A model generated the notes under the pieces. The model made no database searches, had not been told where the DNA came from, and saw nothing but the letters and a program-made list of their open reading frames with translations. A program made the translations under genes and the position numbers. From Botryllus schlosseri (taxonomy: Eukaryota), in NCBI GenBank assembly GCA_051294905.1, contig CM119375.1, positions 9,548,001-9,612,000 of the forward strand: a DNA stretch of 64,000 nt, in the 5' to 3' direction. Numbering within the stretch: the stretch's first letter is position 1; every line of letters starts with the position of its first letter. Positions 3,145 to 52,809 of this stretch are shown in pieces.

Positions 3145-3146
3145 AT

Positions 3147-18587: not shown

Positions 18588-18876
18588 GCGTAGAGTGAAC
18601 TGTCGTTAACCGCTATTGTGACTATTGCCTCGCTGTTGACGTGATCTTTCTATATAGTAAATTTGTTATCCTATTCTGCAATTGTTTGAGTTACATTTGA
18701 CCGGGTCTGAAGCGGTAGGCTCGGATTGCTCAAATTTCGTCTCGAATGCTACCTCATGGGTAACAAGTGTATCGTCAATTCGTCATGCGCCACAATGGAT
18801 AGGCCTATACGTTAGTTACGCATTCCATAAAACAATTGCCCCAGTGATCTGCCAACCAGCTACTGCACTTATTCGT

Positions 18877-18910
<34 letters not shown>

Positions 18911-19062
18911 CTTTATTCGTATACATTACATATCAACATAACACTACAAAAATGTAACAGTGAAATGCGACATGCAAGGTAGACGGGAGGCTCGATATGA
19001 CATAGTCTTCAGAGCCGAGCCACCCGGGACAGGAGCAATTTTCACAGTCGATAACTAATAAG
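18877..19062 (-). mobile_element. Short retroposed 3' fragment with (TC)n tail, left arm only
   Basis: (GA)n at 18881-18908 followed by TTTATT, TSD ATAAG. The empty site is in the mirror arm at ~50125-50140. Confidence 0.65.
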
Positions 19063-19584
19063 GCCTGCGGACTGGAGAAGGTCCCTATAAACGCAAACCA
19101 AGATTGAAAAGGGCCCGAGTATGCTTTTCACTTCTGGTGAATACGTGTTACAACGTTTTATTTGTCGTGAAAAGTTTCACCAAAACTAAATATAAGATTG
19201 TTCTGACTGCAGTGAAGACGGCAATAATTACTCATTAATGGGTACCGCAAAAATTGGAGCTACGCAAAAGCACAACAGGGTCTAAATCGCTCTGAGGTGG
19301 TACGTATGATCCAATTCATAACAACATTCGCGAATCACTTCAACCTTTGGAAATGTCAAAAATGAAACGTTCAAAATAGAACTATTCTAAGATAGAAACC
19401 ACACTGTTGCGTTACCGTGCCAGCAAGTTACTTTTAATGTAACATATAGGTTTGCGGAGTGTTCAAGGCATATTCAAGCACGAACAGCACCACCAACTTC
19501 CTTCGAATTTCTTTTGTTTGTGATCACAAACGAGTACTCCTGAATATTTCCAGCTTATTTCGCTATACTAACCACCTCTACATT

Positions 19585-22500
19585 TTAGTAAAATTTTTCA
19601 CACAGGTAATGAAAGGTTTTACTGCAAATATTGTCGTTGAGCCTTTCATTTTGATTGTGATAGTTCACGAGTTCGACACATCTTTCAGGTGCTGTATCCG
19701 GTTGATTCGGTAACCAATCAGTGTTTTCTCTGTTGGACACCACCCCATCAAGCCAGACATAATGGTTCATGCGCTCCAGGTCATCCAGTCCGATCCAGAT
19801 GCTAGTCGATCCCGATGAATTCCGTACCACGGCCTTGACTTGTCTGCATTATAATTTCATCGATTTACCAGCCGGTGTATTACCGATTGAGCGTTCCTTC
19901 CTGGGTTACCATCAAACGCCATGTTGCCGGTAACAAATCTGCTAACAATGATTACACTGGGCAACAATTTTGAACGAAAAATTTGTTGACTTTGATTTTG
20001 CACTTGATTTAGGCAAATTTTGGCGTGCTGATTCCAAAAACGCCATTGGTTTTCTTCTATCACGTCAAGTTTTTGCTCTACGACATATGCCCAAAATATG
20101 CAAATTTTCACGGATTTAGCCATATAACTTTTCCATACCATATAAAAATCCACACTTTTTACCATATTAACTTATAGAGCCAAGGGCTCAATTAAATTAT
20201 GAAGAAAAAAAGGTACTGGTATCGATCTATAGGCCGATGGTTTCACCCATACTTGGTTAGAGGATGCAACCATCCGAGGATATTTCAGACACATATTTCA
20301 TGCAAACTGCAGGATATGGCAAAAAAATATACATTACATTTCATATCAGCTATAGGTCTAATGCCCCATTCAGCATAACATGTGTAACTTGATACTGATA
20401 TATTCTCGATAATTTGGATCAAGATGACGATCTTAGAGATAGCAGGCCTAATGATGAAGATTTGTCTCGAGTCAAAGTGTCCAATGACTCGAGATGAGTT
20501 GTGACTCGAAGGTAGTGACTTGATTCCAACACTTCCTGGTGTACAGTGTATAGTTGGGACGATGTAATTACGACGTACCGGTACCATGCTGTTAGTAAAA
20601 TTAGGACTAACGTGGATAGGAAAGCACCGCATCGGTACAAGTTTCATGACCGGGTGTGTCAGGGGGAAGCATGACACCTATTTACTTTTGTCCCGTTTTG
20701 ATTCTATCTACTCAATGGTGAATAAACGGCTTCATGTAACGGTAGAATGCTTCTTATGTAATTTAAAATCAATCACGTTATATCCTAAAGGCCAAGTCCA
20801 ATATTGTAATCGGTAATACGATCTCATGTCAGCAATGCCATCATAGCCTACCGCCTTTCGGTATTGGCTACGACGCTACGTCAACATTCGAAACGGAGAG
20901 GGGACCTTATAGGATTCAGATATCTTCCCGTGTGCTCTACCACATATTGTAATATTGAATACATAAATTGGATTTCAGGTTGTCTACTTATAGCAGGGGT
21001 GGGCAAACTTTTGAGCTCGCGGGCCGCATTCAACATCTCAATCCATTCGCGGGCCGCACTATTTAAAATTGGAATTATAAACCAAAACACAATAGTGGTA
21101 TTTGACTAGCCCATATAGTGAGGACATGGGGAAGCTTATTTAAAACAAACCAGGCATTGCTTTGATGATATCGTACATGCCTCAGAAACAGTGGCGAGAT
21201 TTCATAGGCTGCTCGACCTCCATAACCAATTTGTCAAAAACTATAGAGATGAAAGTCGGTGGTCCTGATTCTTAGAACAGGATTCAAATTTAAATCTGTC
21301 AGCAGCGATCTGTTCATAGATTTGCAAATTTCACTTTTGGTTTAGTTCAAGGACACACAATACTGACAGCATCATAACCATGTTAGCTTCAAACACGCTT
21401 CTTCTGTTTGTAGATAAATATATATACCCTAATTCTACGCATACAGAGAACGAATCTACCTAGACACGTGCGAATCGTTTTTATAAGCACATCACTGAAA
21501 TATTCAAAACTGGAGTGGCCAATCTGAAATCACACCCGTGATCCGAATTATGTCAATCTTTAAAATCGGGCTGTCGCGCCAGACATTAAACATAAAAAAT
21601 GATATAGGAAGCATTAACCTTAGAACAGTGGTTCTCAAACTTTGCAAGTCACGCCCCTTTATGATGGTGCAAGATTTCGTGTACCCCTTATCGTCATATC
21701 ACAAAACGTAACCAGGATCCTAGCAAACCTAACAGGTAGTTTGATGGCATGGAAGGCTACGAATGTGGAGTAGAGATTTTTAAATATAAAATTCAGACCA
21801 AATACACAGCAATATTTTGCGTATTGAATGTAAATCGCGCGGAGCGCGAAAAGAATATTCAGTTGATCTCAGCTTCGCGCCCCTCTTCAGATGCTTTCAC
21901 ACCCTCAAGGGGGCGCGCCCCCCAGTTTGCAACCCACTTCCTTAAAATTAGCATGATGAAATATACTAAAAAGTTCAATCAAGTCCCAGCATTAATTCGA
22001 TTTTTAGTACGCATTTTATCAATATTTTTATTAAGGTTCTTTAGACGCTCGCGGGCCGCACAGAACGGTGTTGTGGGCCGCATGCGGCCCGCGGGCCGTA
22101 GTTTGCCCACCCCTGACTTATAGGATGTATATTTTATAGGTAAACTACGGGGTATATGAAAACGGTCTCGAGCCATCCCGAACTACCTTTTTGTCATTTC
22201 CTTTCGAAATGTTAAGTTCGAGTTCAAAGTGAATTCCTAACGACAGGCTCACCTCCTTCGATATACCCTGTATAAAAGTTATTGGCGACGCAGGTATCGC
22301 AATAACCAACATCCGTACCAGTTTAAACTATGGACATCGATACGAATTTGAGTCAGTCCGAAACAATATGCTGCAGCATCGTGATATGCGCTGCGGAGAA
22401 AGTCACAAAACCGGTGTCTTCGCCAAACGGTTAGATCTCAGGATTGTTCAGTGTTTGTCGCTTTCCAGTGTGGAGTCGAGACGTTCGATTCCGTGATAAG

Positions 22501-25141
22501 ATAGTTTGATGTAACTTTAATGGTGATATGTGCAATTTGCATATCTCTCTATCTCGACGGTCGGCTGACTTCCCTTTGTGTATAAGTAAACAATGTTTAT
22601 GGTACGGTCACATATCGTTTATGGTCTATTCACATTGAAACCATCATACATCAGGCTTTCGGGGGTCAGATAAAATGGCCTAGCGGCTAACATTTGTCCC
22701 ACGGTGACTAGTGTCACAGCCCTGACTTCTAATACACTGGTCTACAAATTTCAATTTTTTTTCAGGTTTGGGTTTTGACAACTGATTTTGGCAAATTTTG
22801 GGGCCTTGAATCCTAAAATGGCCTCAGATTTTCTGCATCACATCACGTTTTTGAGATATGAAATATCCCTAATTTTTGAACAAAATCAATTTTTGACCCC
22901 CCCTCTACTTTCAAAACAAGGAATTCCGATGCAATAAATACTGTTTTATCTGTAATAATCCAGATTTAATTAGCAAACTAGCATTCTATATTAGATTCAC
23001 ACAAATTTGCGTTGTACGACATATTCCCTTCATAACATCAGTTGACAACTATATAAAGTTCGATCTCGGCGTGACTGCTGGACCGTGATGTTTTTGTGGA
23101 AATGTCAATACATTACAGCTCCATTACGGTGGCGTTCTGAAGAAAACGGCTGCGGCCAATTTTTTTTTCGTTTCGCCCTTCAGTTTGAGACCACATCATT
23201 TGAGTGCAGGACTCCTTTAACTGTTTCTGAACTCGCCCTGCCCAAGTCCCTGTCTTCAGAATTTCTGCACTTCATCGGAATGTGTATATGCATATTGTGT
23301 GAACTGTAAGCTATAATTCCGATAATACCTTGGTACTGTCCTATCGACATGTTCGTCAGCATATTGTAGCGTTTGATTTCATTATGGTTGCTTTTTTGCG
23401 TGACTATTTTTTATGCCAGGGCATGAAATTTTAATAAAGACAACGCTAATTTGTGTGAATCTAATATAGAATGCTTCTTTGCTAATGAAAGATAGATTAT
23501 TGCAGGTAAATCAGTATTTATTGTATCACAATTCCTTGTTTTGACAACAGTGGGGGGTAAACCATTCATATTTTTTTAAATTAGCGATATTTCATATCTC
23601 AAAAACGTGATGTGATAGAGAAAATCTGAGGTCATTTTCGGATTCAAGGCCCCAAAATTAGCCAAAACCTGTTGTCAAAAAAACCCAAACCTGAAATTTT
23701 GTGTATACCAGTGTTATCGATGAAGGGGTAGCGAGGGTAGGCTTGTGTCATCTGGATACTTACTCCCTCACATGTGGAATACGCATGCCAACACACGCGA
23801 GAGTCGCCTGGACGGCTTCGCATGCCGCCCTCGCCTGTTGATATGTCTTTGCCTCTTTGAATAACTGGTAGCCGTAAATGTTTGATCCGTAAGATATCCA
23901 TTTCCAATCTCGATGCGTCAATAAGTCGAACATCATTAACTCTGAAGAATAGTTGTGCACTATTGCAACACGAAAGAAATGTAATGAGAGCGCATGCGAA
24001 GTAGTTATTAACCGATATTCCTATTTATAAGATGAACCCTCAAAATCACCATACATTACGAAGCTTACTGCGTTGAAAACTTAATCATACATCGCTGTTC
24101 GTTGCTGATGGACAAAGATGCCTAGGTCAGAAATAACGTATTTGTACTATTTAAGGGTAACCAAGAGGGTATTATAACTCGGATTATTATTTTTAAAGAA
24201 ACCGAATAGCTTAGGTAATTGGTTTTCATACTGTTATTGTTGATGGCAGCCTGGTCAATTCTAAGTTGTACAAATTTAAAGATGTAGAATTGCATTGGTA
24301 CTACAACATCCTGATCGCATAAAATGCGCAATAGTCTACTAAAGTCAGATGATGTTAACAATACGCCGAGGAGATACTGACTTCGCACAAGCGTGACGCG
24401 GATGCTACGAACGGAACAAGAAGACCAATATTTTCACAGGTTTCAGGAAGCACTGCGCCCTAAATATCATGTGATATCAAATTAGAGAGAAAATCGGGAA
24501 ATTATATTTGACCGCAGTCAGTTTCGCCAGATAGTCGCCATAACGGAACTGAAAGTAAAAGATAATTCAAACTATCCCCACGCTAGCTGCACAAATATAT
24601 TTCAATGGTGGCAGCCTGTTTGGGATCCGTTGGCTTAGGTAGATTAACAATGTACATTGTTGTAGACATCAAAATCGTTTTAACCAATTGTAATTCGACT
24701 ATACCGTCATCTCTTACCCGCGTACATTTCAAACGCTTTGTTATGTTCAAGTCGTTCTGGACCGCATTTATTACTGCTTCCTGTATTCCTGTTTCTAAGT
24801 AGAAGGTTCACACATTTCTGATTCGAATTGACTATATAGCCTGATTGACTAGTTTGACTATTTCGGGATACATTACTTTGTGACGTCGCTAGTTCGGAGC
24901 AGTCGCACATTCCAGACTCCCCCTTTTCTCCTTTGCTCCCATTGATACCGATTCGGCCATCTCGTCCAGGTTCCCCTGCATTTCCTTGGCTTCCTTTGAT
25001 TCCGGCCTTGCCTGGTCGTCCAGGAGGCCCGATGATCTGCTCAGTATCATCCTGATCGCAGCAGCAATGTCCGTGAACGAGACGAAGGAACGATAGGTAT
25101 GTTAAAAGGACAAGGACCAGGTGACGTAGCATCTCAGACAT
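19585..25141 (-). CDS. Collectin-like lectin A (signal peptide, CCC, 13 Gly-X-Y, C-type lectin domain with QPD)
   Basis: Inferred exons 25141-24877, 24404-24378 (27-nt micro-exon, least certain), 23941-23764 and 19843-19585. GT-AG splice phases are compatible and give an open frame ending LCEKFY*. Canonical CTLD cysteines, IWIGLDD, WLPNQPD, LND. Confidence 0.88.
20994..22115. mobile_element. Buster-type hAT MITE with a nested MITE at 21626-21939
   Basis: TIRs CAGGGGTGGGCAAAC / GTTTGCCCACCCCTG, TSD ACTTATAG. The nested element CAGTGGTTCTCAAAC has TSD CCTTAGAA/CCTTAAAA. Confidence 0.9.
22735..23713. mobile_element. CACTGG-ended element with long imperfect terminal inverted repeats (mirror 46775-47753)
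   Basis: CACTGGTCTACAAATTT...AAATTTTGTGTATACCAGTG ends, with >150 bp of inverted subterminal homology. TSD unclear. Confidence 0.65.
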
Positions 25142-26183
25142 ATCTGACCTATGCAGCCTCAATGTAACGTGGCTGTGACCTGATTCAGGCTGCCCTGCTC
25201 GTTTATATGTAACTAGTGTTGCTATGCATTTTTTCAAATTACTCTCTCCCTTGAGAATTCGAGACTAACGTTTTCAAACAATTAGAGCCATTAATATAAG
25301 CTTTTTTCCTTGTTGACATGAATTATTATCCACAATTAATCTCTATTTATGTCCACATGATATGCCGGAACGTGGTATTGTCGGCACCATCCACATGAAA
25401 TAACTATTTTCTGTTAATGTTTTTAAATATCCAATTTGAATTTACATTTAAAACGAAAATATGTCCTAAACGATTTTTAAAGGATTAATTTTGAACGCGT
25501 GTGCTTTGTTGCTGCTACTACTTCAAATTGGGTCCATGTGACAGTCTCAGTTCCGGGTGCAATGATCACAGGCATAGCAAAAAGGGAGGGGTGGTAGGAA
25601 ATTATGGGAGAGTGGGCAATACCAGGGAGTCGAAATGCAATATTGGAGCCCTGGCTGCAAGATAACTTCATTTATAATTACTCCCAACGGGAGATGAGCG
25701 AAATACGTAGTTTTGCATTTAAAACAAAAATCAATTTAAAACAAACATGTTTAAAACAGGGTCATAATTTAAAACATGTTTTTTGTTGTTTTTTAGACAC
25801 GACGTCGATTATTTTCAATCGTGACGCCGCAATGGGCTGACATCGTTACATGGTTTCTTAAGAATTACAATTGAAAATATAGCTTTCAGTACAACATCCA
25901 TTGTAGTAGAAAATTTAATAAACTAGAAGACTTTTCGGGTGCCTCTTTTCAAGAGTCAACGGCAGAAAAAATTACTACAATGAGTGTTGCATTGAAAGCT
26001 ATATTCAAGTTCTGTACCACGGACCGGCTATTTAATTGAAAATATAGGGTAAATATGGATCATTTGGCGAGTTTCCGAGTCGTCTTCACCGGACCACAAA
26101 ACCTCTTTTACCAGGACTACATCGTCATGCAGCATTTTTTACGGTCAGCGGTCATCATCATCATAACATTAATTCCGACACAG

Positions 26184-26608
26184 CAGTGGTTCCCAACCGG
26201 TGGGGAATTGTCCATGCCCACTAGAGGGGAACAGACGCATTTGCAAAATAACTACATGCAATATATACATATGTACGGAGGCATAACACCACGATGACGG
26301 TTACTAGCTCACTGCTCTGGAATATGCGTAGGTAATTTTAACGCGTGTTGTCCACAAAAACTCATTTCGAACTCTGAATAACCAATATTGGGCACACAAA
26401 CACATTTACTAGATACGCAAGAATTTTTATGTTGCAGTAACAGGCGATTGTTCACTTCAACAGTCAGACGTTGCGAAACAAAGTCTAACCGAATTTTATT
26501 GGATGGAGGATTTCAAGTGTTCAATAGCGGGATTTTAGTTTGTAGGGAATAAAAGGAACTGAAAAAATCAGAAGTGGGGAATGAAGGAAAAAAGGTTGGG
26601 AACCACTG
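26184..26608. mobile_element. Buster-type hAT MITE (mirror 44009-44457)
   Basis: TIRs CAGTGGTTCCCAACC / GGTTGGGAACCACTG, degenerate TSD. Confidence 0.8.
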
Positions 26609-26707
26609 CAATACAGTGATATATAACTACATGTTATAATTGTTGAACCGACGACGATTTCGCGGGCTCCAGCCATTCCATGTCGTATACGTCGACTATA
26701 TCTAGAG

Positions 26708-27572
26708 CGGTGGTTCTCAACCTTTTTGTCTTCGCGGGCCCCTTTTGCACCTTAACCCCCCAAGTTTTAGTAAATATTTAGGTCAATAATAGTGCAAGCA
26801 TCATTTGACTTGTGCAAATACTAACTGCATGGTAGTAATCAACAGCAATAAAATGATTTTTCTTGAAAATAACATCGTAATATTTATATAGAAAGTGGGA
26901 AAACTTTTATTATTTCAAAGCGAATTCTGTAGCTGCGCGCGTTTCTTGAAATACGCGGCTGAATGATGAAAATCCGCGCCGTCGATTTGATATGTGCGAG
27001 TGCCGAAATACATTTCCACAAAGATGTTGGCGAATGTGATAATAATGCGTAACGCACCCGACGACACCTTCGGGTATTTGATCGCAAGTTGCAACATATA
27101 TCACACCAGAATTGAGAAGATATTGTTAATGAACATATAACGCCCAGCCTCGTCGTTTCTATCCATCAACCCATCAGTTCTTTTCAATATATCGCAATCC
27201 TGTGGTGTAATGATTTGATAATAATTTCAATAATACGGTGATGATGAAAAATGAAGTTATTCTGGAAAAGCGGTTATGTTTATCAAAGGAGAATATGGTT
27301 TTTGCAAACAAATCTTTCCAAAACCCAAACAAAACATCTCTAAACATTATGTTTAGACTATTGGCAATTAAAATGAGTTTGCACAGAATAATATTGCATA
27401 CTAGATGGCCATTCTGTTTATGTGGATCCCGAAGATTAAGCAGTTGTAGCGAAACTGCCTCGTGATGTCTCTTATTAAAAAATATACAAGCTAGGTTATC
27501 AATCACTTTGCAAATTTGGAGGCTCGCGGACCCCCTGAAACTGATTCGCGGACCCCCGGTTGAGAACCGTTG
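26708..27572. mobile_element. Buster-type hAT MITE (mirror 43136-43909)
   Basis: TIRs CGGTGGTTCTCAACC / GGTTGAGAACCGTTG, TSD ATCTAGAG/ATCTCGAA. Confidence 0.8.
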
Positions 27573-28007
27573 ATCTCGAATTCTTATACTACATCTTTTT
27601 GCATACAATATTATACAACTTTTTAAAAATATAATTATTTTTAACGACATGTGTTTTGAAACACCTCTTGTTTCAAATGCAGCCGTAGATATATACGACT
27701 GCATCCAGTCTCTCTTCTGACCAGCTTCCTCGCAACCATTTCCCCGATGCGTCCCAGCTGGCTAATCGACTGCAGTTTCTGTTGTAGGTTTGGTATTTCT
27801 GGTCATTAGACAGATCTTTGTTATTTGATTCCTTATCAGTCGACTTTTAACATGACCCTATTTCACTTTAGGTTTTTTTAAGATACCGAAGTTTGACAAT
27901 ATGTCTGCTCACGTAACGATAATTTGTTGATAGCCAATGCCAACGCGAGCGATAGATGAGATAATTATAGATATGTGGCGATTGGCTAGCACTTTCATTG
28001 CTTATAC

Positions 28008-28880
28008 CAGTGGTTCTTAACCTGGGGGTAATTACCCCCAAAGGGGTAATTTCCAATTTTAGGGGGGTAATTCAAATTTACATTTTTATAAACTTGCACT
28101 GAAATATTTTCAAACGTAAATACGAATGTAGGCTAACATATAATTTTGTGAGCTTGTATATATTTTGTTTCACTTAACACACCATGCCTGCTGTGATATC
28201 ATAGTAAACGCTAGTGGTTATAAACAACAGGGTCTAATCTAGTTTAGTATAGTGCTAGGTAAGTCCAATTTATTTTGCAGTACTGCGGATCATATAATGT
28301 TAAGCATGCTGGCAAATTGAAAGACAACCAGGGGCGTCTATAGGTTCAGCTTTAACCCTATAATGCAGCAACAATATCGTAGAAATATAGTTGCTAGTAT
28401 TGAAAAGTGAAGTGGTCTAGCCAGAAAAATTAGGTTCGACATTAAAATGCCTTCCAAGAAACGAGGGGAAGATATTGGAACTTTTTGGGTTCGCCTTCAA
28501 AATGAGTAACCAATCTTCGTCATAATGGCATTGAACTTTATGATTGAATTTCCTTCAACTTGATGTGAAATAGGATTTTCTGCAACGGTATCTATCAAAA
28601 GGAAATATCGAAATAAGTCTGCGATTGACAATTACATCAGTCTATTATCCTCCCATTTTGGTAGATGTGACCACTTGATACCGGTTACACAAAAACAGCA
28701 TCAGCCTTTGACTGGATATTCCAACAGGCATTTCAGTGTACATTGTGACGTCACCTCGCGTTATTTTACAATTAATTAGGTGCAAGCTGCAGCCGAATTT
28801 GTTATTTTTTGAAAAGGGGTAATTGCATCTCCTCATTTTCTTCTTGGGGGTAAAGATATGAAAAAGGCTAAGACCCACTG
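28008..28880. mobile_element. Buster-type hAT MITE, left arm only
   Basis: TIRs CAGTGGTTCTTAACC / GGCTAAGACCCACTG, perfect TSD GCTTATAC. No counterpart in the right arm. Confidence 0.88.
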
Positions 28881-29084
28881 GCTTATACTACCTAATTCTT
28901 CGTCGATCTGAGGCATGTTGTTTGGTAACCTTTAGCGTAATAATGATTTATTGATAGCCATTACCAATACGGGCGCGAGTTGGGAGAATGATCGATATGC
29001 GGGGATCGACCTCACTTTCATCGATACTAATGCAGTATTTATGCTGACCGATTCTTTGTTTATTTATTATAGTTGTGCTCACCG

Positions 29085-32114: not shown

Positions 32115-32202
32115 ATATAGACCTACTTCTCTCGATGAAGTCAGTCCTACAAATCATTATGATTACCAAAACTTACCCCGCTGAATTTGGATCCTTATAA
32201 AG

Positions 32203-42050: not shown

Positions 42051-42224
42051 ACGAGGGTATTTCGGCACCTTCTATGAACGACGGTATATGCAGATTGCAG
42101 ATCCTGCACGCATGGTATGCATATGCAGTTATACAGATTGTGTGTATGTGTATCATCGTGTCCGGTCAATACCGAGTGCCAATTCTCAGGAATGAATTTC
42201 TCGACAACGTCCGTCTCAGTAAAT

Positions 42225-42420
42225 TAGATTCTCGACATTGTCCATTCCCAGTATTGTCCATTCTCTCTAATACCCATTCACGGTAATATACATTCTCGTC
42301 AATGTCCATTCTCGGTAATAGCATTCATGGTAATATACATTCTCGCCAATGTCCATACTCGGTAATAGCATTCTCGGCAATGTACATTCTCGGTAATGGT
42401 GTTCTCGTTCATATTCGGTA
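42225..42420 (+). repeat. Degenerate CATTCTCGGTAAT/CATTCTCG tandem repeat (shorter mirror at ~29395-29460)
   Basis: About ten CATTCTC-containing units visible. Confidence 0.75.
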
Positions 42421-45334
42421 TGCTAACCTCGATTCTTTGGAGATTATTGCTCGCAAACGAACCTTAAAAGGTTCTTCACGTATGTACATTTTTTGAATTT
42501 CGATATTAACGTGGATTATCGAGCTACATACCTGTTATAGGCACTGTATTAGTATCGATGACAGTGAAGTCGATTCCAGCATATCAATCATTCTCCCATC
42601 TCGCGCCCGTGTTGGTAATGGCTATCAATAAATCATTATTACGCTTAAGGTTAGCAAACAACATGCCTCCGATCGACGAAGAATTAGTAGTAGCAATGAA
42701 AGTGCTAGCCGATCGCCATATATCTATAATTATCTCATCTATCGCTCGCGTTGGCATTGACTATCAACAAATTATCGTTACGTGAGCAGACATACTGTCA
42801 AACTTCGGTATCTTACAAAAACCCAAAACGAAAGTGGGTCATGCTAAAAGTCGACTGATAAGGAATCAAATACCAAAGATCTGTCTATAATGGCTATGAA
42901 TACCAAAACTACAACAGAAACTGCAGACGATAAGCGAGCTGGGACGAATCGAGGAAATAGTTGCGAGGAGCTGGTCAGAAGAGAGGCTGGGGGCAGTCGT
43001 ATATATCTACGGCTGCATTTGAAACAAGAGGTGTTTCAAAACACATGTCATTAAAAATAATTATATTTTTAAAAAGTTGTATAATATTGTATGCAAAAAG
43101 ATGTAGTATAAGCATTCGAACCACATACAATAGATCAGCGGTTCTCAACTTGAATTTTTTTTAAATTAGAGAAATCGCGAGGCAGTTTCGCTACATAACT
43201 GCTTAATCTTCGGGATCCACATAAACAGAATGGCCATCTAGTGTGAAATATTATTCTGTGCAAACTCCTTTTAATTGCCAATAGCCTAAACATAATGTTT
43301 AGAGATGTTTTGTTTGGGTTTTGGAAAGATTTGTTTGTAAAAACCGTATTCTTCTTTGATATACATAACCGCTACTCCAGAATAACTTCATTTTTCATCA
43401 TCACCGTGCTATTGAAATTATTATCAAATCAATACATCACAAGATTGCGATATAATGAAAAGAACTGATGGGTTGATAGATAGAAACGACTAGGCTGGAC
43501 GTTATATGTTCATTAACAATATGTTTCTCAATTATGGTACAAAATATGTTGCAACTTGCGATCAAATACCCGAAGTTGTCGTCGGATGCGTTACGCATTA
43601 TTATCATATTCGCCAACATCTTTGTAGAGATGGATTTCGGCACTCGTTCATATCAAATCGTTCATTCATCACTCAGCCGCGTATTTCAAGAAACGCGCGC
43701 AGCTACAGAATTCGCTTAGAAACAATAAAAGTTTTCCCACTTTCTATATAAATATTATGATGTTATTTTCAAGAAAAATCATTTTATTGCTGTTTATTGC
43801 TACCATGCAGTTAGTATTTACATAAGACAAATGACGCTTATATCTACTAAAACTTGGGGGGTTAAGGTGCAAAAGGGGTCCGCGAAGACAAAAAGGCTGA
43901 GAACCACTGCACTAGATATAGTCGACTTATACGACATGGAATGGTTGGAGCCCGCGAAATCATCGTCGGTTTGACAATTATAACATGTAGTTATATATCA
44001 CAGCATCGCAGTGGTTCCCAACCTTTTTTCCTTCGTTCCCCACTTCTGATTTTTTCAGTTACTTTTATTCCCTACAAACTAAAATCTCTCTATTGAAAAC
44101 TTGAAATCCTCCATCCAATAAAATTCGGTTAGACTTTGTTTCGCTGAGTCTTGCCGTTGGCGAGAACAATCGCCTTTTGTTGCAACATAAAACTTCCTGT
44201 GTATCTACTAAATGTGTTTGTGAGCCCAATATTGGTTTTCCAGAGTTCGAAATGAGTTTTTGTGGACAACACGCGTTAAAATTACCTACGCATATTCCAG
44301 AGCAGTGAACTAGTAACCGTCATCGTGGTGTTATGTCTCCGCACATATATGTATTTGTATATATTGCATGTAGTTATTTTGCATTTGCGTCTATTCCCCA
44401 GCAGATATCTCTGAATTCCCCACTAGTGGGTAATTCCTCGCCGGTTGGGAACCACTGCTGTATCGGAATTGATGTCTGATGAGTATGATGACCGCTGACC
44501 GTACAAATGCTGCATGACGAGGTATTCCTGGTAAAAGAGATGTTGATAGTTCGGTGAAGACGGCTCGGAAACCTCTTTCACCAAAAGAGCCATATTGACC
44601 CTATATTCGCAAATGCAATTCTTAAGAAACCGTATAATAATATCAATCCATTGTGGCGTCAAAATTGAAAATTCCCGACGTCTTGGCTAAAAAAACAATA
44701 AAAAAACATGTTTTAAATAAGGACCTTGTTTTAAACATATTTGTTTTAAATTGATTTTTGTTTTAAATACAAAACAACGTAGTTCGCTCATCTCCGGTTG
44801 GGAGTAACTCTAAATGAACTTATCTTGCAGTCAGGGCTCCAATATTTCATTTCGACTCCCTGGTATTGCCCACTCGCCCATAATTTCCTACCACCCCTCC
44901 CTTTTTGCTATGCCTGTGATCATTGCAGCCGGAACTGAGACTGTCACATGGACTCAATTTGAGGTAGCAGCAGCAACAAAGCACACGCTTTCAAAATTAA
45001 TCCTTTAAAAATCGTTTAGGACATATTTTCGTTTTAAATATAAATTCAAATTGGATATTTAAAAACATTAACAGAAAATAGTCATTTCATGTGACTGCTG
45101 CCGACAATACCACGTTCCGGCATATCATGTGAACATAAATAGGGATTAATTGTGGATAATAATTCATGTCAACAAGGAAAGAAGCTTATATTAATTGTTT
45201 CAAAACGTTAGTCTCGAATTCCCAAGGGAGAGAGTAATTTGAAAAAATGCATAGCAACACTAGTTACATATAAACGGGCAGGGCAGTCTGAATTCGGTCA
45301 CTGCCACGTTACATTGAGGGTGCATAGGTCAGAT

Positions 45335-48300
45335 ATGTCTGAGATGCTACGTTACCTGGTCATTGTCCTTTTGACATACGAATCGTTCCTTCATCTCGTT
45401 CACGGACATTGCTGCTGCGATCAGGAGGATAGTGAGCAGATCATCGGACCTCCTGGACGACCAGGTAAGGCCGGAATCAAAGGAAGCCAAGGAAATGCCG
45501 GGAAACCAGGAAGAGATGGCCGAATCGGTATCAATGGGAGCAAAGGAGAAAAGGGGGAGTCTGGAATGTGCGACTGCTCCGAACTAGCGACGTCACAAAG
45601 TAATGTATCCCGAAATAGTCAAACTAGTCAATCAGGCTATATAGTCAATTCGAATCAGAAATGTGTGAACCTTCTACTTAGAAACAGGAATACAGGAAGC
45701 AGTATTAAATGCGGTCCAGAACGACTTGAGCATAACAAAGCGTTTGAAATGTACGCGGGTAAGAGATGATGGTATAGTCGAATTACAATTGGTTAAAACG
45801 ATTTTGATGTCTACAACAATGTACATTGTTAATCTACCTAAGCCAACGGATGCCAAACAGGCTGCCACCATTGAAATATATTTGTGCAGCTAGCGTGGGG
45901 ATAGTTTGAATTATCTTTTACCTCCAGTTCCGTTATGGCGACTATCTGGCGAAACTGACTGCGGTCAAATATAATTTCCCGATTTTCTCTCTAATTTGAT
46001 ATCACATGATATTTAGGGCGCAGTGCTTCCTGAAACCTGTAAAAATATTGATCTTCTTGTTCCGTTCGTAGCATCCGCGTCACGCTTGTGCGAAGTCAGT
46101 ATCTCCTCGGCGTATTGTTAACATCATCTGACTTTAGTAGACTATTGCGCATTTTATGCGATCAGGATGTTGTAGTACCAATGCAATTCTACATCTTTAA
46201 ATTTGTACAACTTAGAATTGACCAGGGCTGTTCAAGGGGCGCCATCAACAATAATAGTATGAAAACCACTTACCTAAGCTATTCGGTTTCTTTAAAAATA
46301 ATAATCCGAGTTATAATACCCTCTTGGTTACCCTTAAATAGTACAAATACGTTATTTCTGACCTAGGCATCTTTGTCCATCAGCAACGAACAGCGATGTA
46401 TAATTAAGTTTTCAACGCAGTAAGCTTCGTAATGTATGGTGATTTCGAGGGTTCATCTTATAAATAGGAATATCGGTTAAAAACTACTTCGCATGCGCTC
46501 TCATTACATTTCTTTCGTGTTGCAATAGTGCACAACTATTCTTCAGAGTTAATGATGTTCGACTTATTGACGCATCGAGATTGGAAATGGATATCTTACG
46601 GATCAAACATTTACGGCTACCAGTTATTCAAAGAGGCAAAGACATATCAACAGGCGAGGGCGGCATGCGAAGCCGTCCAGGCGACTCTCGCGTGTGTTGG
46701 CATGCGTATTCCACATGTGAGGGAGTAAGTATCCAGATGACACAAGCCTACCCTCGCTACCCCTTTATCGATAACACTGGTATACACAAAATTTCAGGTT
46801 TGGGTTTTTTTGACAACAGGTTGTGGCTAATTTTGGGGCCTTGAATCCGAAAATGACCTCAGATTTTCTCCATCATATCACGTTTTTGAGATATGAAATA
46901 TCGCTAATTATAAAAAAAATATGAATTGTTTACCCCCCTCTGTTGTCAAAACAAGGAATTCTGATACAATAAATACTGATTTACCTGCAATAATCTAGCT
47001 TTAATTACCAAAGAAGCATTCTATATTAGATTCACACAAATTAGCGTTGTCTTTATTAAAATTTCATGCCCTGGCATAAAAAATAGTCACGCAAAAGATC
47101 AACCATAATGAAATCAAACGCTACAATATGATGACGAACATGTCGATAGGACAGTACCAAGGTATTATCGGAATTATAGCTTACAGTTCACACAATATGC
47201 ATATACACATTCCAATGAAGTGCAGAAATTCTGAAGACAGGGACTTGGGCAGGGCGAGTTCAGAAACAGTTAAAGGAGCCCTGCACTCAAATGATGTGGT
47301 CTCAAACTGAAGGGCGAAACGAAAAAAAAATTGGCCGCAGCCGTTTTCTTCAGAACGCCACCGTAATGGAGCTGTAATGTATTGAAATTTCCACAAAAAC
47401 ATCACGGTCGAGCAGTTAAGCCGAGATCGAACTTTATATAGTTGTCAACAGATGTTATGAAGTGAATATGTCGTACAACGCAAATTTGTGTGAATCTAAT
47501 ATAGAATGCTTGTTTGCTAATTAAATCTGGATTATTACAGATAAAACAGTATTTATTGCATCGGAATTGCTTGTTTTGAAAGTAGAGGGGGTTCAAAAAT
47601 TGATTTTTTTCAAAAATTAGGGATATTTCATATCTCAAAAACGTGATGTGATGCAGAAAATCTGAGGCCATTTTAGGATTCAAGGCCCCAAAATTAGCCA
47701 AAATCAGTTGTCAAAACCCAAACCTGAAAAAAATTGAAATTTGTAGACCAGTGTATTAGAAGTCAGGGCTGTGACACTAGTCACCGTGGGACAAATGTTA
47801 GCCACTAGGCCATTTTATCTGACCCCAGAAAGTCTGGTGTATGATGGTTTCAATGTGAATAGACCATAAACGATATGTGACCGTACCATAAACATTGTTT
47901 ACTTAAACACAAAGGGAAGTCAGCCGACCGTCGAGATAGAGAGATATGCAAATTGCACATATCACCATTAAAGTTACATCAAACTATCTTATCATGGAAT
48001 CGAACGTCTCGACTCCACACTGGAAAGCGACAAACACTGAACAATCCTGAGATCTAACCGTTTGGCGAAGACACCGGTTTTGTGACTTTCTCCGCAACGC
48101 ATATCACGATGCTGCAACATATTGTTTCGGACTGACTCAAATTCGTATCGTTGTCCATAGTTTAAACTGGTACGGATGTTGGTTATTGCGCTACCTGCGT
48201 CGCCAATAACTTTTATACAGGGTATATCGCATGAGGTGAGCCTGTCGTTAGGAATTCACGGCGGTATAGGCTACGATGGCATTGCTGACATGAGATCGTA

Positions 48301-49599
48301 TTACCGATAACAATATTGGACTTGGCCTTTAGGATATAACGTGATTGATTTTAAATTACATAAGAAGCATTCCACCGGTACATGAGGCCGATTATTCACC
48401 ATTGACAAGATAGAATCAAAACGGGACAAAAGTAACAAGGTGTCATGATTCCCCCTGACACACCCGGTAATGAAACTTGTACCGATGCGGTGCTTTCCTA
48501 ACCACGCCCGTCCTAGTTTTACTACCAGCATGGTACGCCGTACTTACATCGTCCCAACTATACACTGTACGCCAGGCAGTGTTGGGATCAAGTCACTACC
48601 TTCGAGTCACAAGTCATCTCGAGTCATTGGACACTTTGACTCGAGACAAATCTTCATCATTAGGCCTGCTATCTCTAAGATCGTCATCTTGATCCAAATT
48701 ATCGAGAATATATCAGTTTCAAGTTACACATGATATGTTGAATGGGGCATTAGACCTATAGCTGATATGAAATGTAATGTATATTTTTTTGCCATATCCT
48801 GCAGTTTGCATGAAATATGTGTCTGAAATATCCTCGGATGGTTGCATCCTCTAACCAAGAATGGGTGAAAACATCGGCCTAGATCGATACCAGTACCTTT
48901 TTTCTTCATAATTTAATTGATCCCTTGGCTCTATAAGTTAATATGGTAAAAAGTGTGGATTTTTATATGGTATGGAAAAGTTGTATGGCTAAATTCGTGA
49001 CAATTTGCATATTTTGGGCATATGTCGTAGAGCAAAAACTTGACGTGGTAGAAGAAAACCAATGGCGTTTTTAGAATCAGCACGCCAAAATTTGCCTAAA
49101 TCAAGTGCAAAATCAAAGTCAACAAATTTTTCGTTCAAAATTGTTGCCCAGTGTAATCATTGTTAGCAGATTTGTTACCGGCAACATGGCGTTTGATGGT
49201 AACCCAAGAACGCTCAATTGGTAATACACTGGTGACTGAAGTATAAATAAGTGAGGAGTGAGATATCCCACAATTTAACGTCAGTGATGAAATAACCAAA
49301 TTTATATATAGGCTGGTAAATCGATGAAATTATAATGCAGACGTGTCAAGGCCGAGGTACGGAAATCATCGGGCTCGACTAGCATCTGGATCGGACTGGA
49401 TGACCTGGAGCGCATGAATCATTATGTCTGGCTTGATGGGGTGGTATCCAACAGAGAAAACACTGATTGGTTACCGAATCAACCGGATACACCAGAGGAA
49501 AGATGTGTCGAACTCGTGAACTATCACAATCACAATAGAATGCTCAACGACAATACTTGCAGTAAAACCTTTCATTACCTGTGTGAAAAATTTTACTAA
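45335..49599 (+). CDS. Collectin-like lectin B (inverted paralog of A, QPD-type)
   Basis: Inferred exons 45335-45599, 46072-46098, 46547-46724 and 49341-49599, giving an open frame. Same architecture as A. Confidence 0.88.
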
Positions 49600-50643
49600 A
49601 ATGTAGAGGTGGTTAGTATAGCGAAATAGGCTAGAAAATTTCAGGAGTAGGCCTACTCGTTTGTGATCACAAACAGAAGAAATTTCAAAGGAAGTTGGTG
49701 GTGCTGTTCGTGCTTGAATATGCCTTGAACACTCCGCAAACATATGTTACATTGAAAGTAACTTGCCGGCACGGTAGCGCAACAGTGTGGTTTCTATGTT
49801 AGAATACTTCTATTTCGAACGTTTCATTTTTGACATTTCCAAGGGTTGGAGTGATTCGCGAATGTTTTTATGAATTGAATCATATGTACCACCGCAGAGC
49901 GATTTAGACCCTGTTGTGCTTTTGCGTAGTTCTAATTTTTGAGGTACCCATTAATGAGTAATTATTGCCGTCTTCACTGCAGTCAGAACAATCTTATATT
50001 TAGTTTTGGTCAAACTTTTCACGACAAATAAAACGTGATGTGTGACACGTATTCACCAGAAGGGAAAAGCATACTCGGGCCCTTTTCAATCTTGGTTTGC
50101 GTTTATAGGGACCTTCTCCAGTAGGCAGGCCTTATAAGAATAAGTGCAGTAGCTGGTTGGCAAATCGCTGGGGCAATTGTTTTATGTAATGCGTAACTAA
50201 CGTATATCCACTGTGGCGCATGACGATACACTTGTTAGTGTTACCCATGAGGTAGTATTCGAAACGACATTTGAGCAACTGCTGCGTAGCAATACCCGAA
50301 CTTGTCTCTAGACAAGTTGATGTTGTTTGTGGTAGCCTATTCTTAGTGATTCTCGACTGCAATGATCATTTACACCAGGCCGATATTCTTTCTTTTTATT
50401 CCGTATAGCTTCCTACGTATAGCACGACCCACTTCTAGGGTTTTTGAGATACCGCTTACGCGGATCAGACGGTGATGAGGAGCCTAGATAAATCTCCAAC
50501 ACTGGGGAATGGATTCTGGAGTCAAACTCGGAGGGCCATTCTAAAAGTTGCCAGATACAGAATCTTGAAAGGAATATCGGTATTATGTAAATGACCACGA
50601 AAAACACCATGAATTCAACAACAACAACCACTGCGGGTTAGAC

Positions 50644-51652
50644 TAGGGTTACCATATTTTGGAAATCTGAGAAGAGGACACTTTTTCCAAATTTTCAGAC
50701 TCGCAATACAGGAGGAAAATCCTGAAAAATGGTAAATTTGTAGCACTTCATGGTAGTCGGTTGACTATAAAAACGTCAACTTTCTGGCTCAGCTCCCGAA
50801 ATAGCCGGCGGAGCGTTACTTCAGTGCTCCCTGCTCATTTACTGTATCTCAGTCGAATTTTTGCCCTATATTCAACCAAAACTCTCAAAAAAGAGGACAT
50901 ATTGGCGTCATCCGAGGACACTTTTTAAAAAGTCAAAAGAGGACAAATGCTCTTAAAAGAGGACGTATGGTAACCCTAGGTTAGACAGGGTTACCATATT
51001 TTGGAGTCGGAAAAGTAGGACACTTTTACCAAATGAGAAAAGTTAATTGATCAAGACTGAAAACAGCCGATTTCGCTATTTATGCTTTAAAATTTGGCGA
51101 GTTGACTAAAAATAAGGTCATCACTTTCGTTCGACTTCCGGTTTGCACACCTTTTACTTCAATTTAGTGGTGTTGACTCCAAAAAAGGTCGTCATTTTCG
51201 ATCGAAACACAAATGTCCCGCTCGAACGTCGTTCTTTGCTATTTAGCGTCAGATAAGCCCATTTTCACTAGAATCTAGCCATTATCTTAGCTGTGAAAGC
51301 TGTAAAGGAGGACGAATTGCCAAAAAGGAGCACATTTAGTCGTGCTTTAGGAGGATTCGTCCTCCTTTTTCAGGTTTTTGAAAATGCCCTCCGAGGACGC
51401 CCTCCTTATTGGCAATTCGTTTTCCTTTACCGCTTTTAGAGCTAAGATAATCGATAGAAGCGAGTGAAAATGGGCATAAATGACGCTAAATAGGAAATTC
51501 GTGGATCGATCGAAAGCGACCACCTTTCTTCTAGTCAACCCACCAATTTTTTCGGCAAAAAAGCGTAATCAGATGATTTCAGTTTTGATCAACTAACTTT
51601 TCTGATTTGGTAAAGGTGTTCTCCTTTCCCGATTCCAAATATGGTAACCCTA
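50644..51652. mobile_element. Two adjacent TAGGGTTACCATA-family hAT MITEs (50644-50978 and 50987-51652)
   Basis: TIRs TAGGGTTACCATA / TATGGTAACCCTA. The first element has TSD GGTTAGAC. AGAGGAC subterminal motifs. Confidence 0.85.
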
Positions 51653-51876
51653 ACGTAGTGTGGAAAGTCTAGGTTATTAGATGTATTTTAACTCAGATAT
51701 GAGTTAGAGCAGCCTCTCTTGTCTGGCATGAATGTAAATGAAGTATTTGAGGAGCCGGGTTACTGGATGTCACGATGTGTTTCAAAATAATGACTAGTCG
51801 CAAAGGCCGTGTCTGATTTGTTTGCAAAGGGAGGATTAAATACACCTTCCTCATCCCTGGCCGACAACCTATAAGG

Positions 51877-52521
51877 CAGTGGTCACCAACACTCGGCCCG
51901 CGGGCCACATACGGCCCGCGAGGTCATGTTTAGCGGCCCGCGATCTGATTTCAGAAGAACGCTAATTGAAGCTATTCTCCTGTGTCCAGCATCGCTATTC
52001 CTCACGAGCTGAAACCACTTTCGTGATGGCAACAGCATTCCATCGGGAGAGAATCAGCTGATATGAATGCACAATGGGAATGATCATATTGCCTTGATGC
52101 GCAATGGCTGGCACTGCCAAGACCGAAACGGCTTAGAGGGCTTCCCCTCAAGATCAGGCTTTACCAGGAGATAGTGTTTCAGCTAGTACCGTGTGTAGCT
52201 AACCCCCAGATTCATTAGCCGCTGAAAAGTGTTTTCTGCAGGTATCGTGCGCAACTCACAGATCAAAATAAAATGAAATTGATTAACATGATATTTTTGT
52301 TGAATTTTTATTTCATTAATAAAATATTAATTCTTTTGCTGGAAATATGCCTTTTGCTCATGTTAGAGAACACAGTGTTGTACTAACGTAACGATTTAAA
52401 AACGTGGTTCCTAAATGTGTGGCCTATTTTATCGCGATATTGCATGTTTGCGGCCCGCGGTCTATGCGAAATTTGAAAAGTGACCCGTGACCCGCGACCC
52501 GCTTTGAGTTGGCAACCCCTG
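51877..52521. mobile_element. Buster-type hAT MITE
   Basis: TIRs CAGTGGTCACCAAC / GTTGGCAACCCCTG, TSD CTATAAGG. Confidence 0.88.
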
Positions 52522-52809
52522 CTATAAGGACTCGCTATAATGTACGTTTTGGTCGTTGCCTAGCTTAAACGATGGTTCTATATATTTGCTTGATTAAAGT
52601 CCTTGGTTGCATCAATTTAGGCTTCTCGAGGAGCTTACCAACTGGAATTGAGACTACTTCCTCCATTTCTTTGCTTCCTATAATCCGAGCCAACCCCTTG
52701 AGACCCGGTCAAATGTAACTCAATCAATTGAAGAATAGGATAACAAATTTACTACATAGAAAGATCATGTCAACATCGAGTCAATAATAGTCACAAATCC
52801 ATGCTAAAC

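What the first reader, a model, noticed from the sequence alone, without database searches (positions are those of the whole stretch)
18616..52796. 34-kb lectin-bearing palindrome with an 11-bp spacer and identity that decays outward from the axis
Seen in sequence: the arms look identical from ~32800 to the axis, show about 3 substitutions in 32000-32800 and about 2% divergence near 31300, reach roughly 90-95% near 30100-30500, and beyond that carry arm-specific indels and TE insertions. One duplication event should give roughly uniform divergence. Inference: the arms are being homogenised by intrachromosomal arm-to-arm conversion or re-folding that is strongest near the hairpin, as established for mammalian Y palindromes, but here on a divergently transcribed innate-immune gene pair. 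An 11-bp spacer with kilobases of perfect arms should also extrude cruciforms and make the locus a rearrangement hotspot, which could generate lectin diversity.
Basis: partly seen in the sequence, partly recalled or inferred. Interest (0 to 1): 0.85.

Follow-up and report, generated by a model that had tools for sequence, protein, structure and literature searches.

The report
Fold-back lectin palindrome with homogenised centre
Two collectin-like lectin genes lie in an old 34-kb inverted duplication; its centre was re-made by a DNA fold-back inside a broken transposon and is now almost identical on both sides, but no sequencing read could be checked across the join.

Summary
The inner arms, 30403-34615 and 34627-38839, flank an 11-nt spacer. 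Outward from the axis, arm differences are 0 in 1873 nt, then 3 in 1050, then 21 in 1217, then about 7%.

The decay is stepped and stops at about 4.1 kb. Further out divergence is a mosaic: 7-13% at 6.5-9 kb, then only 1.2-1.5% over intron 1 and exon 2 of the intact lectin genes, then 2-9%.

The axis is not a self-palindromic MITE. It is a breakpoint in an ~850-bp hAT-type element: only the first ~157 nt survive, mirrored, and the strand turns back at a self-complementary (TA)5 with an 11-nt loop. This matches short-loop fold-back priming.

A 1.16-kb hAT element with its 8-bp target duplication sits on both arms. It is only 2.1% from its nearest genomic copy, against dS about 0.08 for the old duplication. 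So it was copied from one arm to the other later.

The homogenised centre holds transposons and a truncated lectin fragment, not the intact genes.

Read-level proof failed: read laying was lost to a filter, and no run was listed for the junction. I put about 0.6 on the full account. An in-vitro snap-back at the innermost centre remains the main rival. This is a new member of a known kind.

The parts
18616..34615 (-). Left arm of the inverted duplication. Its genes read away from the axis.
   Evidence: Collinear BLAST chain against the reverse complement of the right arm. Homology starts abruptly at 18616.
34627..52796 (+). Right arm of the inverted duplication. It is about 2.2 kb longer than the left arm because of arm-specific transposon insertions.
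   Evidence: The flanks beyond 18616 and 52796 are not mirror images of each other.
34616..34626 (+). 11-nt asymmetric spacer, the hairpin loop. It continues the left-arm copy of the truncated hAT element, with (TA)5 tracts on both sides.
   Evidence: The loop variant occurs only once in the 495-Mb assembly. The central 301 nt fold as DNA at -193.5 kcal/mol with an 11-nt loop.
34482..34626 (+). TE-C: the first ~145-157 nt of an ~850-bp non-autonomous hAT-like element, cut off at the axis. The remaining ~700 nt and the 3' terminal repeat are absent from the window.
   Evidence: Intact family members are 839-865 bp with 8-bp target duplications. Other copies match one arm only. No remainder was found in the window.
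34627..34760 (-). Mirror copy of the TE-C 5' end on the right arm.
32743..34615 (.). Zone 0, left side: 1873 nt perfectly identical to 34627-36499.
34627..36499 (.). Zone 0, right side.
31693..32742 (.). Zone 1, left side (mirror 36500-37549): 3 mismatches in 1050 nt, 0.29%.
30476..31692 (.). Zone 2, left side (mirror 37550-38766): 21 mismatches in 1217 nt, 1.7%. The outer edge is sharp and lies inside the inner lectin-domain last exon.
33108..34266 (+). TE-B: a 1.16-kb non-autonomous hAT element with an 8-bp target-site duplication. The mirror copy is at 34976-36134.
   Evidence: At least 40 genomic copies. Terminal repeats and the target duplication were seen, and other copies have their own target duplications. 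The nearest copy, L005, is 97.9% identical, 24 differences in 1161 nt.
31100..32120 (.). TE-A: member of an older multi-copy repeat family. The mirror copy is at 37122-38142.
   Evidence: one copy at 94% identity and dozens at 75-86%.
30401..31029 (-). Inner truncated collectin-like fragment, left arm. It has exon-2-like and exon-3-like parts only, with an EPN motif. A stop replaces the Trp of WIGL and a conserved Cys is changed to Tyr. No collagen exon is present.
38213..38835 (+). Inner truncated collectin-like fragment, right arm. The WIGL Trp and the Cys are intact, but the C-terminal frame differs. No collagen exon is present.
19588..25141 (-). Outer collectin-like gene, left arm. Exon 1 is 25141-~24707 (signal-like start, Cys cluster, 13 Gly-X-Y triplets). 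Exon 2 is 23969-23766. Exon 3 is 19842-19588 (lectin domain, QPD motif). All three pieces are open.
   Evidence: Pfam Collagen E=4e-8 and Lectin_C E=1.7e-9. Splice reading by eye. tblastn.
45335..49596 (+). Outer collectin-like gene, right arm. Exon 1 is 45335-~45769, exon 2 is 46519-46722, exon 3 is 49342-49596. All three pieces are open.
   Evidence: amino-acid identity to the left copy is 94.5% in exon 1, 100% in exon 2 and 89.4% in exon 3; dS is 0.076 in exon 1, 0 in exon 2 and 0.082 in exon 3.
23516..24715 (.). Second low-divergence island (mirror about 45768-46967): 1.5% over the end of exon 1, intron 1 and exon 2. It includes a 284-nt perfect run.
   Evidence: 18 mismatches in 1200 nt, against 6.1% just inward. 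A perfect run this long has p=0.006 under uniform placement.
20856..22228 (.). Insertion present on the left arm only: a ~1.1-kb multi-copy repeat.
39740..42297 (.). Stretch present on the right arm only; part of it is multi-copy repeats.
50279..52681 (.). Stretch present on the right arm only, made of several multi-copy repeats.

Best explanation
This is a genuine germline palindrome built in at least two stages.

(1) An old inverted duplication placed two copies of a lectin segment head to head. Synonymous divergence of about 0.08 dates it. Each copy holds an intact collectin-like gene and a truncated paralogue. The arms then diverged and picked up their own transposons.

(2) hAT elements later inserted near the centre. 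A break then left a 3' single strand ending inside one of them. That strand snapped back on a self-complementary (TA)5 tract, leaving an 11-nt loop, and primed synthesis along its own arm. The new strand rejoined the old opposite arm by homology. This deleted the rest of the transposon and the former centre. It also copied arm-specific sequence, including the 1.16-kb hAT element with its target duplication, onto the other arm.

(3) The same hairpin geometry has since re-copied the centre repeatedly. This could happen by snap-back priming after nearby breaks, or by mismatch repair in extruded stems. The probability falls with distance from the loop, which gives steps of 0%, 0.3% and 1.7% before the old ~7%.

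(4) An ordinary interstitial conversion separately homogenised intron 1 and exon 2 of the intact genes.

Shown directly: the structure, the truncated element, the age order and the mosaic of divergence. Inferred: the fold-back mechanism, the recurrent events anchored at the centre, and that a native molecule carries the junction.
For: Structure and steps:
- Structure and divergence steps.

The junction is a rearrangement breakpoint, not the structure of a mobile element:
- Intact family members are 839-865 bp with 8-bp target duplications and terminal repeats of about 15 nt.
- Only their first ~157 nt are present here, on both arms.
- None of the other 39 scored genomic copies is palindromic.

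The junction has the form of a short-loop hairpin:
- The strand turns back next to a self-complementary (TA)5 with an 11-nt loop.
- Yeast fold-back inversions use loops under 15 nt and stems from 4 nt (PMC7467729).

Age order:
- TE-B differs from its nearest copy at 24 of 1161 sites, 2.1%.
- Old-arm dS is 0.076-0.082 and non-genic divergence is 7-9%.
- TE-B, with its target duplication, is nevertheless identical on both arms, so it was transferred after the duplication.

The outer duplication is not a mis-join:
- The window has no N.
- The flanks beyond the arms are unrelated to each other.
- No third copy or haplotig of the unique inner DNA exists in the assembly.

Conversion happens independently of the axis:
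- A conversion island lies 10-11 kb from the axis. This shows arm-to-arm conversion at this locus where no centre artefact could reach.

The junction is not a template-then-complement read-through:
- That would give a zero-spacer palindrome that also mirrors the 11 nt. Here the 11 nt occur once (inference).
Against:
- A search of public runs with the 65-nt junction (3 sampled words) listed none. The best four runs of the species hold 45-55% of the words of the inner 8.4 kb. This is a weak negative: there were few words, they sit next to a mutable (TA)n tract, and hairpin nodes may be trimmed from contigs.
- A 4.2-kb, 99.2%-identical palindrome with an 11-nt spacer is expected to be unstable in vivo (review PMC7999016; small spacers are least stable, PMC8327919).
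- The step from 0 to 0.29% is only borderline (p=0.046). Repeated re-copying rests mainly on the 0.29% against 1.7% step.
- The sequence of the transposon copy before the event is unknown, so the true stem or microhomology length cannot be stated.
Confidence: 0.62

Rival explanations
1. The outer inverted duplication and most of the inner arms are real, but the immediate centre is an artefact. This covers the 11-nt spacer, the mirrored transposon stub and up to 1.9 kb of perfect identity. A polymerase-made snap-back molecule from library preparation or amplification would have been used by the assembler to bridge a poorly covered true spacer.
For: - No public run was listed for the junction words.
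- No read could be checked.
- Microhomology fold-back chimeras are a known product of in-vitro polymerases (my own knowledge, not tested here).
- The perfect zone is exactly the part that one molecule could supply.
Against: - The trend towards identity is already present in sequence that must be real, because the arms still differ there (0.29% and 1.7% zones).
- No alternative continuation, orphan spacer contig or second copy of the loop variant exists in the assembly.
- A chimeric long read of typical length would give a perfect zone of several kb, not 1.87 kb. Its outer half would then mismatch true right-arm reads (inference).
- The junction negative is weak, because even the best runs hold only about half of the region's words.
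Confidence: 0.22
2. The whole right arm is the other haplotype of a single-copy locus, falsely joined in inverted orientation in a very heterozygous genome. The arm differences are then allelic.
For: - Arm divergence of 3-9% with transposon indels is in the range reported for allelic divergence in some marine invertebrates (my own knowledge).
- Other individuals of the species hold only 27-29% of the region's words.
Against: - There is no gap or N at either end.
- The sequence beyond 52796 is not the mirror of the sequence before 18616, so a second exact mis-join at the arm end would be needed.
- The model does not predict identity rising to 100% at the join.
- The mosaic includes a 284-nt perfect run around exon 2, flanked by 6% divergence. 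This fits paralogue conversion better.
Confidence: 0.04
3. There is no continuing conversion. The pattern comes from a few nested, discrete fold-back duplications of different ages, each replacing the centre once, followed by ordinary divergence.
For: - The profile is stepped with sharp edges, especially at about 4.14 kb.
- One fold-back junction is visible.
Against: - Only one junction exists, so each later event would have to reuse the same loop. That is in effect conversion anchored at the centre.
- The island at 10-11 kb cannot be made this way.
Confidence: 0.1

Closest known systems
Large sex-chromosome palindromes of primates and mice, kept alike by arm-to-arm gene conversion (PMC3723533, PMC8327919, bioRxiv 10.1101/800185)
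   Same: - Multi-kb inverted arms carry a gene pair.
- Arm-to-arm sequence transfer is demonstrated indirectly.
- Structural change is concentrated at the centre of symmetry, and small spacers are the least stable.
   Different: - Those arms are more than 99% identical along their whole length, with spacers of kilobases. Here only the inner 4.1 kb exceeds 98%, the rest is 87-97%, and the spacer is 11 nt.
- This locus carries secreted lectin genes rather than testis genes. Whether this chromosome is an autosome was not determined.
- Keyword searches found no mention of a centre-to-edge identity gradient (for 'gradient'; for arm-position terms only).
Fold-back inversions (inverted duplications) primed from short-loop single-strand hairpins after a double-strand break, as seen in yeast, human germline and tumours (PMC7467729, PMC3907307, PMC10622511)
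   Same: - The inverted junction has a loop under 15 nt beside a short self-complementary tract.
- Sequence distal to the breakpoint is lost.
   Different: - Experimental events usually yield dicentric or terminally deleted chromosomes and further rearrangement.
- Here the product is interstitial and stable enough to be assembled, presumably because an older inverted copy provided homology for rejoining (inference).
Palindromic rDNA minichromosome of Tetrahymena and induced yeast palindromes formed from short inverted repeats next to a break (recalled from memory, not checked here)
   Same: A giant palindrome with a short non-palindromic centre that derives from a pre-existing short inverted repeat.
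   Different: Those are programmed or selected amplification products. This is a chromosomal two-copy locus with old, diverged outer arms.
Collectins (collagen-containing C-type lectins such as mannose-binding lectin)
   Same: An N-terminal Cys cluster, 13 Gly-X-Y triplets, and a C-type lectin domain with WIGL and a QPD sugar-binding motif.
   Different: - The collagen stalk is short.
- Orthology to vertebrate collectins was not tested, and a homology search with exon 1 found nothing.
- The inner paralogue carries EPN instead of QPD and lacks the collagen exon.

Membership tests
Palindrome homogenised by arm-to-arm gene conversion | Inverted arms of many kb around a short non-duplicated spacer | tested here: met
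   Arms are 16.0 and 18.2 kb with an 11-nt spacer.
Palindrome homogenised by arm-to-arm gene conversion | Arm identity above 99% along the arms | tested here: not met
   Only the inner 4.1 kb is 99.4% identical. The outer blocks are 87-97%.
Palindrome homogenised by arm-to-arm gene conversion | Evidence that sequence moved between arms after the duplication | tested here: met
   The mirrored hAT element is 2.1% from its nearest copy against an arm dS of 0.08. Divergence is heterogeneous at p down to 4e-10, and there is a conversion island in the gene.
Palindrome homogenised by arm-to-arm gene conversion | Concerted evolution seen in orthologous palindromes, or shared paralogous variants in populations | not testable with these tools
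   No relatives of this genome are available (header). Read laying was lost.
Fold-back inversion by short-loop hairpin priming | Head-to-head junction with a loop under 15 nt | tested here: met
   The loop is 11 nt. The class definition is in PMC7467729.
Fold-back inversion by short-loop hairpin priming | Short inverted repeat or microhomology at the turn in the sequence before the event | tested here: inconclusive
   A (TA)5 self-complementary tract sits at the turn. The sequence of this transposon copy before the event is unknown. Family members read ...ATACA then C or T at that point, which allows 1-2 nt or more of pairing.
Fold-back inversion by short-loop hairpin priming | Loss of the sequence distal to the breakpoint | tested here: met
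   About 700 nt of the ~850-bp element, including its 3' terminal repeat, are missing from the window.
Self-palindromic hAT MITE at the axis (companion note s1-301027) | The element family itself consists of two long terminal inverted repeats around an AT tract | tested here: not met
   Family members are 839-865 bp with terminal repeats of about 15 nt. Every other scored copy matches one arm only.
Assembly or read artefact (template-complement or missing-adapter palindrome) | Zero spacer or adapter at the axis, with arms perfect for a read-scale length | tested here: not met
   The 11-nt asymmetric spacer comes from the element, and the perfect zone is only 1873 nt. This does not exclude a polymerase snap-back artefact.
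Assembly or read artefact (any kind) | No native read crosses the axis; halved depth | tested here: inconclusive
   Read laying failed. No run was listed for the 3 junction words. There was no hit in metagenome contigs.
Collectin-like C-type lectin | Collagen-like Gly-X-Y region plus a C-type lectin domain in one gene | tested here: met
   Pfam Collagen E=4.2e-8 on exon 1 and Lectin_C E=1.7e-9 on exon 3. Both arm copies are open in all three exon pieces. The splicing is inferred, with no RNA evidence.

The most novel reading that the evidence does not exclude
A germline palindrome that renews itself from its own hairpin. After breaks near the centre, the resected strand snaps back on the 11-nt loop and re-copies its own arm outward. 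This would produce a conversion probability that falls with distance from the axis, a conversion gradient anchored at the centre. No such gradient came up in keyword searches of three sex-chromosome palindrome papers. It would also explain how a near-spacerless multi-kb palindrome persists in an animal genome.
Probability: 0.3. Interest if true: 0.65.

Novelty: new member of a known kind. Interest (0 to 1): 0.45.

Why it matters
If the junction is real, this locus is a natural example of a short-loop fold-back inversion fixed in an animal germline. Its breakpoint can be read to the base inside a datable transposon.

It sits on an older inverted duplication that supplies an internal clock. That clock makes a rarely measurable quantity visible: how arm-to-arm homogenisation depends on distance from the centre of symmetry.

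It would also be a test case for how long a multi-kb palindrome with almost no spacer can survive in vivo.

For lectin biology the consequence is modest. The intact collectin-like pair lies outside the homogenised centre. The two copies have diverged most in the sugar-binding exon (dN/dS 0.75, from only 16 substitutions).

If the centre is an artefact, the case is a useful warning about snap-back joins inside real inverted repeats.

Tried and rejected
Steps that gave nothing:
No depth, spanning-read or joint evidence exists.
- The second run search, with the 65-nt junction, listed no run. I treat this as weak evidence: there were only 3 words, they lie next to a (TA)n tract, and the best runs hold only about half of the region's words.
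- A junction pattern with a variable (TA)n gap found nothing in metagenome contigs.
- Exact-product look-ups found nothing on record, both for an ORF crossing the axis and for collectin exon 1.
- A homology search with exon 1 gave no hit at E<=0.001.

Ideas rejected:
- The axis as a self-palindromic MITE.
- A single duplication with uniform ageing.
- Monotonic decay over the whole 34 kb.
- A template-then-complement read-through artefact, because the 11-nt loop is present once and not mirrored.
- A third copy or haplotig elsewhere in the assembly.
- The rest of the truncated element sitting at the exit junction.

Not attempted:
- Polarising the 34 inner differences or testing GC bias, because there are too few sites and no close outgroup.

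Earlier scan notes list other palindromes in this genome, mostly built by transposons. None was checked here.

Full report
**Observation**

The window has no N. An inverted repeat runs from 18616 to 52796 around an 11-nt spacer at 34616-34626. The inner arms, 30403-34615 and 34627-38839, align without gaps for 4213 nt with 34 mismatches. The mismatches are a mix of transitions and transversions.

The first mismatch is 1874 nt from the axis. The next two are at 2411 and 2542 nt. From 2924 nt mismatches become frequent.

| Distance from axis | Mismatches / aligned nt | Divergence |
|---|---|---|
| 1-1873 nt | 0 / 1873 | 0% |
| 1874-2923 nt | 3 / 1050 | 0.29% |
| 2924-4140 nt | 21 / 1217 | 1.7% |
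| 4141-5800 nt | 66 / 929 | 7.1% |

Source.

Uniform placement of the mismatches is excluded (5e-7). The 0.29% to 1.7% step (p=7e-4) and the 1.7% to 7% step (p=4e-10) are solid. The 0 to 0.29% step is borderline (p=0.046).

Beyond about 4.1 kb the divergence does not keep rising.

| Distance from axis | Divergence |
|---|---|
| 6.5-9 kb | 7-13% |
| 9.9-11.1 kb | 1.2-1.5% |
| out to 12.4 kb | 2-3% |
| 13.5-15.5 kb | 4-5% |
| arm end | 8.8% |

The trough at 9.9-11.1 kb covers the end of exon 1, intron 1 and exon 2 of the intact lectin genes. It contains a 284-nt perfect run (p=0.006). Exon 2 has no difference at all, whereas exons 1 and 3 have dS of 0.076 and 0.082.

So the arms are a mosaic. 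The old background is about 8%. There is one interstitial conversion island, and one large stepped homogenised block that abuts the axis.

**Content of the arms**

Each arm carries an apparently intact collectin-like gene that reads away from the axis. Its parts are:
- Exon 1: a hydrophobic start, a Cys cluster and 13 Gly-X-Y triplets (Pfam Collagen, E=4e-8).
- Exon 2: the first part of the lectin domain.
- Exon 3: the rest of the lectin domain, with WIGL and a QPD motif (Pfam Lectin_C, E=1.7e-9).

The two copies are 94.5%, 100% and 89.4% identical in protein across the three pieces. Exon 3 has 12 non-synonymous against 4 synonymous changes.

Nearer the axis each arm has a second, truncated paralogue. 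It has exon-2-like and exon-3-like parts only, an EPN motif and no collagen exon. The left copy has a stop in place of the WIGL tryptophan and a Cys changed to Tyr. The right copy is open there.

The rest of the inner 4.1 kb is mostly transposons:
- an old repeat at 31100-32120;
- a 1.16-kb non-autonomous hAT element at 33108-34266, with terminal repeats and an 8-bp target-site duplication;
- the stub at the axis.

So the homogenised centre contains no intact gene. Stretches present on only one arm further out are multi-copy repeats.

**The axis**

The 134 nt on each side of the spacer belong to a repeat family. I first tested whether this family is a self-palindromic MITE. It is not.
- Every other scored copy in the genome matches one arm only.
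- Intact members are 839-865 bp with terminal repeats of about 15 nt and clean 8-bp target duplications.

Here only the first ~157 nt are present. The 11-nt spacer continues the element on the left arm. Directly after it, the sequence turns into the reverse complement at a (TA)5 tract, which is its own complement. The other ~700 nt of the element are nowhere in the window. The loop variant is unique in the assembly.

This is the signature of a strand that snapped back and primed on itself. Yeast fold-back inversions use hairpins with loops under 15 nt and stems from 4 nt (PMC7467729). The central 301 nt fold as a perfect DNA hairpin at -193.5 kcal/mol.

**Order of events**

The mirrored 1.16-kb hAT copy differs from its closest relative (locus L005) at 24 of 1161 sites, which is 2.1%. 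If it had been present before the old duplication it should have accumulated at least about 4% on its own lineage. This follows from an arm-to-arm neutral divergence of about 8%.

It therefore inserted after the duplication. It is now on both arms, target duplication included, with no difference between them. Sequence has thus been copied from one arm to the other across at least the first 1.5 kb.

The axis junction cuts another hAT copy whose closest relatives are 96-97% identical. This also suggests a junction younger than the old duplication, but only 132-135 nt are compared. The present centre therefore looks secondary: it overwrote whatever lay between the old arms.

**Mechanism proposed (inference)**

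A break near the centre left a 3' tail that folded on the (TA)5 tract and copied its own arm outward. It then re-annealed with the older, homologous opposite arm. That rescued the chromosome from the dicentric fate usual for fold-back products.

Once the loop existed, any later break within resection range of it could repeat the process. Mismatches in extruded or lagging-strand hairpin stems could also be repaired. Both routes favour sequence close to the loop and would give the nested steps seen here.

The island in the gene body shows that ordinary interstitial conversion between the arms also occurs.

**Is the junction real?**

Arguments against a gross mis-join:
- There is no gap.
- The flanks are unrelated: 1-18615 is not the mirror of 52797-64000.
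- There is no third copy of the unique inner DNA.
- The conversion island lies far from the axis.

Argument against a template-then-complement or missing-adapter read: the 11 nt are present once, not mirrored.

What remains possible is a polymerase-made snap-back molecule that bridged a real but different centre.

The junction query listed no public run. Metagenome and exact-product look-ups were empty.

The run result is weak. It rests on three words beside a mutable (TA)n tract. In addition, even the best runs of this species hold only 45-55% of the words of the inner 8.4 kb.

Even if the centre is an artefact, the arms are real from 1874 nt outward and already show the rise in identity towards the centre.

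| Reading | Weight |
|---|---|
| Full account (real palindrome, fold-back origin, arm-to-arm conversion) | 0.62 |
| Nested discrete fold-backs without ongoing conversion (centre still real) | 0.10 |
| Artefactual centre | 0.22 |
| False join of two haplotypes | 0.04 |

The centre is therefore real as assembled with a weight of about 0.72.

**Comparison and novelty**

Arm-to-arm conversion in large palindromes, and instability at their centres, are established (PMC3723533, PMC8327919). Fold-back inversions from short-loop hairpins are also established (PMC7467729, PMC3907307).

This locus is a new member of those kinds. Two features are less usual:
- a datable fold-back junction superimposed on an older inverted duplication;
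- an identity profile anchored at the centre. Keyword searches of the palindrome papers found no mention of such a gradient (for 'gradient'; for arm-position terms only).

Claims about cruciform extrusion, hotspot behaviour and generation of lectin diversity remain untested. The most homogenised part carries no intact lectin gene.

Noticed in passing
window 1-2788 and 55716-62495: These two stretches form a direct repeat at 80-89% identity in several blocks. The start of the window holds a partial paralogue of the GH31-type gene that lies right of the palindrome, so the palindrome sits between two direct copies of that gene.
   Followed up: no
window 19588-19842 versus 49342-49596: The sugar-binding exon of the two intact lectin genes has 12 non-synonymous against 4 synonymous differences (dN/dS about 0.75). 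The changes lie near the QPD motif and the following loop, while exon 2 is identical. This suggests relaxed or diversifying selection, but the counts are small.
   Followed up: partly
window 30401-30595 and 38596-38835: The inner truncated paralogues carry an EPN (mannose-type) motif, whereas the outer genes carry QPD (galactose-type). The left copy is disabled by a stop at the WIGL tryptophan and the right copy is open there.
   Followed up: partly
window 22760-23015 versus 23440-23696, mirrored at 46792-47050 versus 47475-47729: A local inverted repeat of about 257 nt at 85-87% identity lies inside the intron between exons 2 and 3 of each intact lectin gene. It is probably a small fold-back element.
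   Followed up: no
window 17412-18590: A hAT-like element related to the one at the axis ends about 28 nt outside the left outer boundary of the palindrome at 18616. Weak matches to the family's terminal regions lie at 17412-17444 and 18532-18587.
   Followed up: no
window 33108-34266; loci L003-L010: The 1.16-kb hAT family has at least 40 copies at about 93% identity, each with its own 8-bp target duplication. The window copy lacks a ~92-nt internal segment that most copies have.
   Followed up: partly
window 26034-26181 versus 53313-53453: A weak inverted match at 79% identity links the region upstream of the left lectin gene to sequence just beyond the right arm end. This is the 'orphan upstream region' of the companion note.
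   Followed up: no
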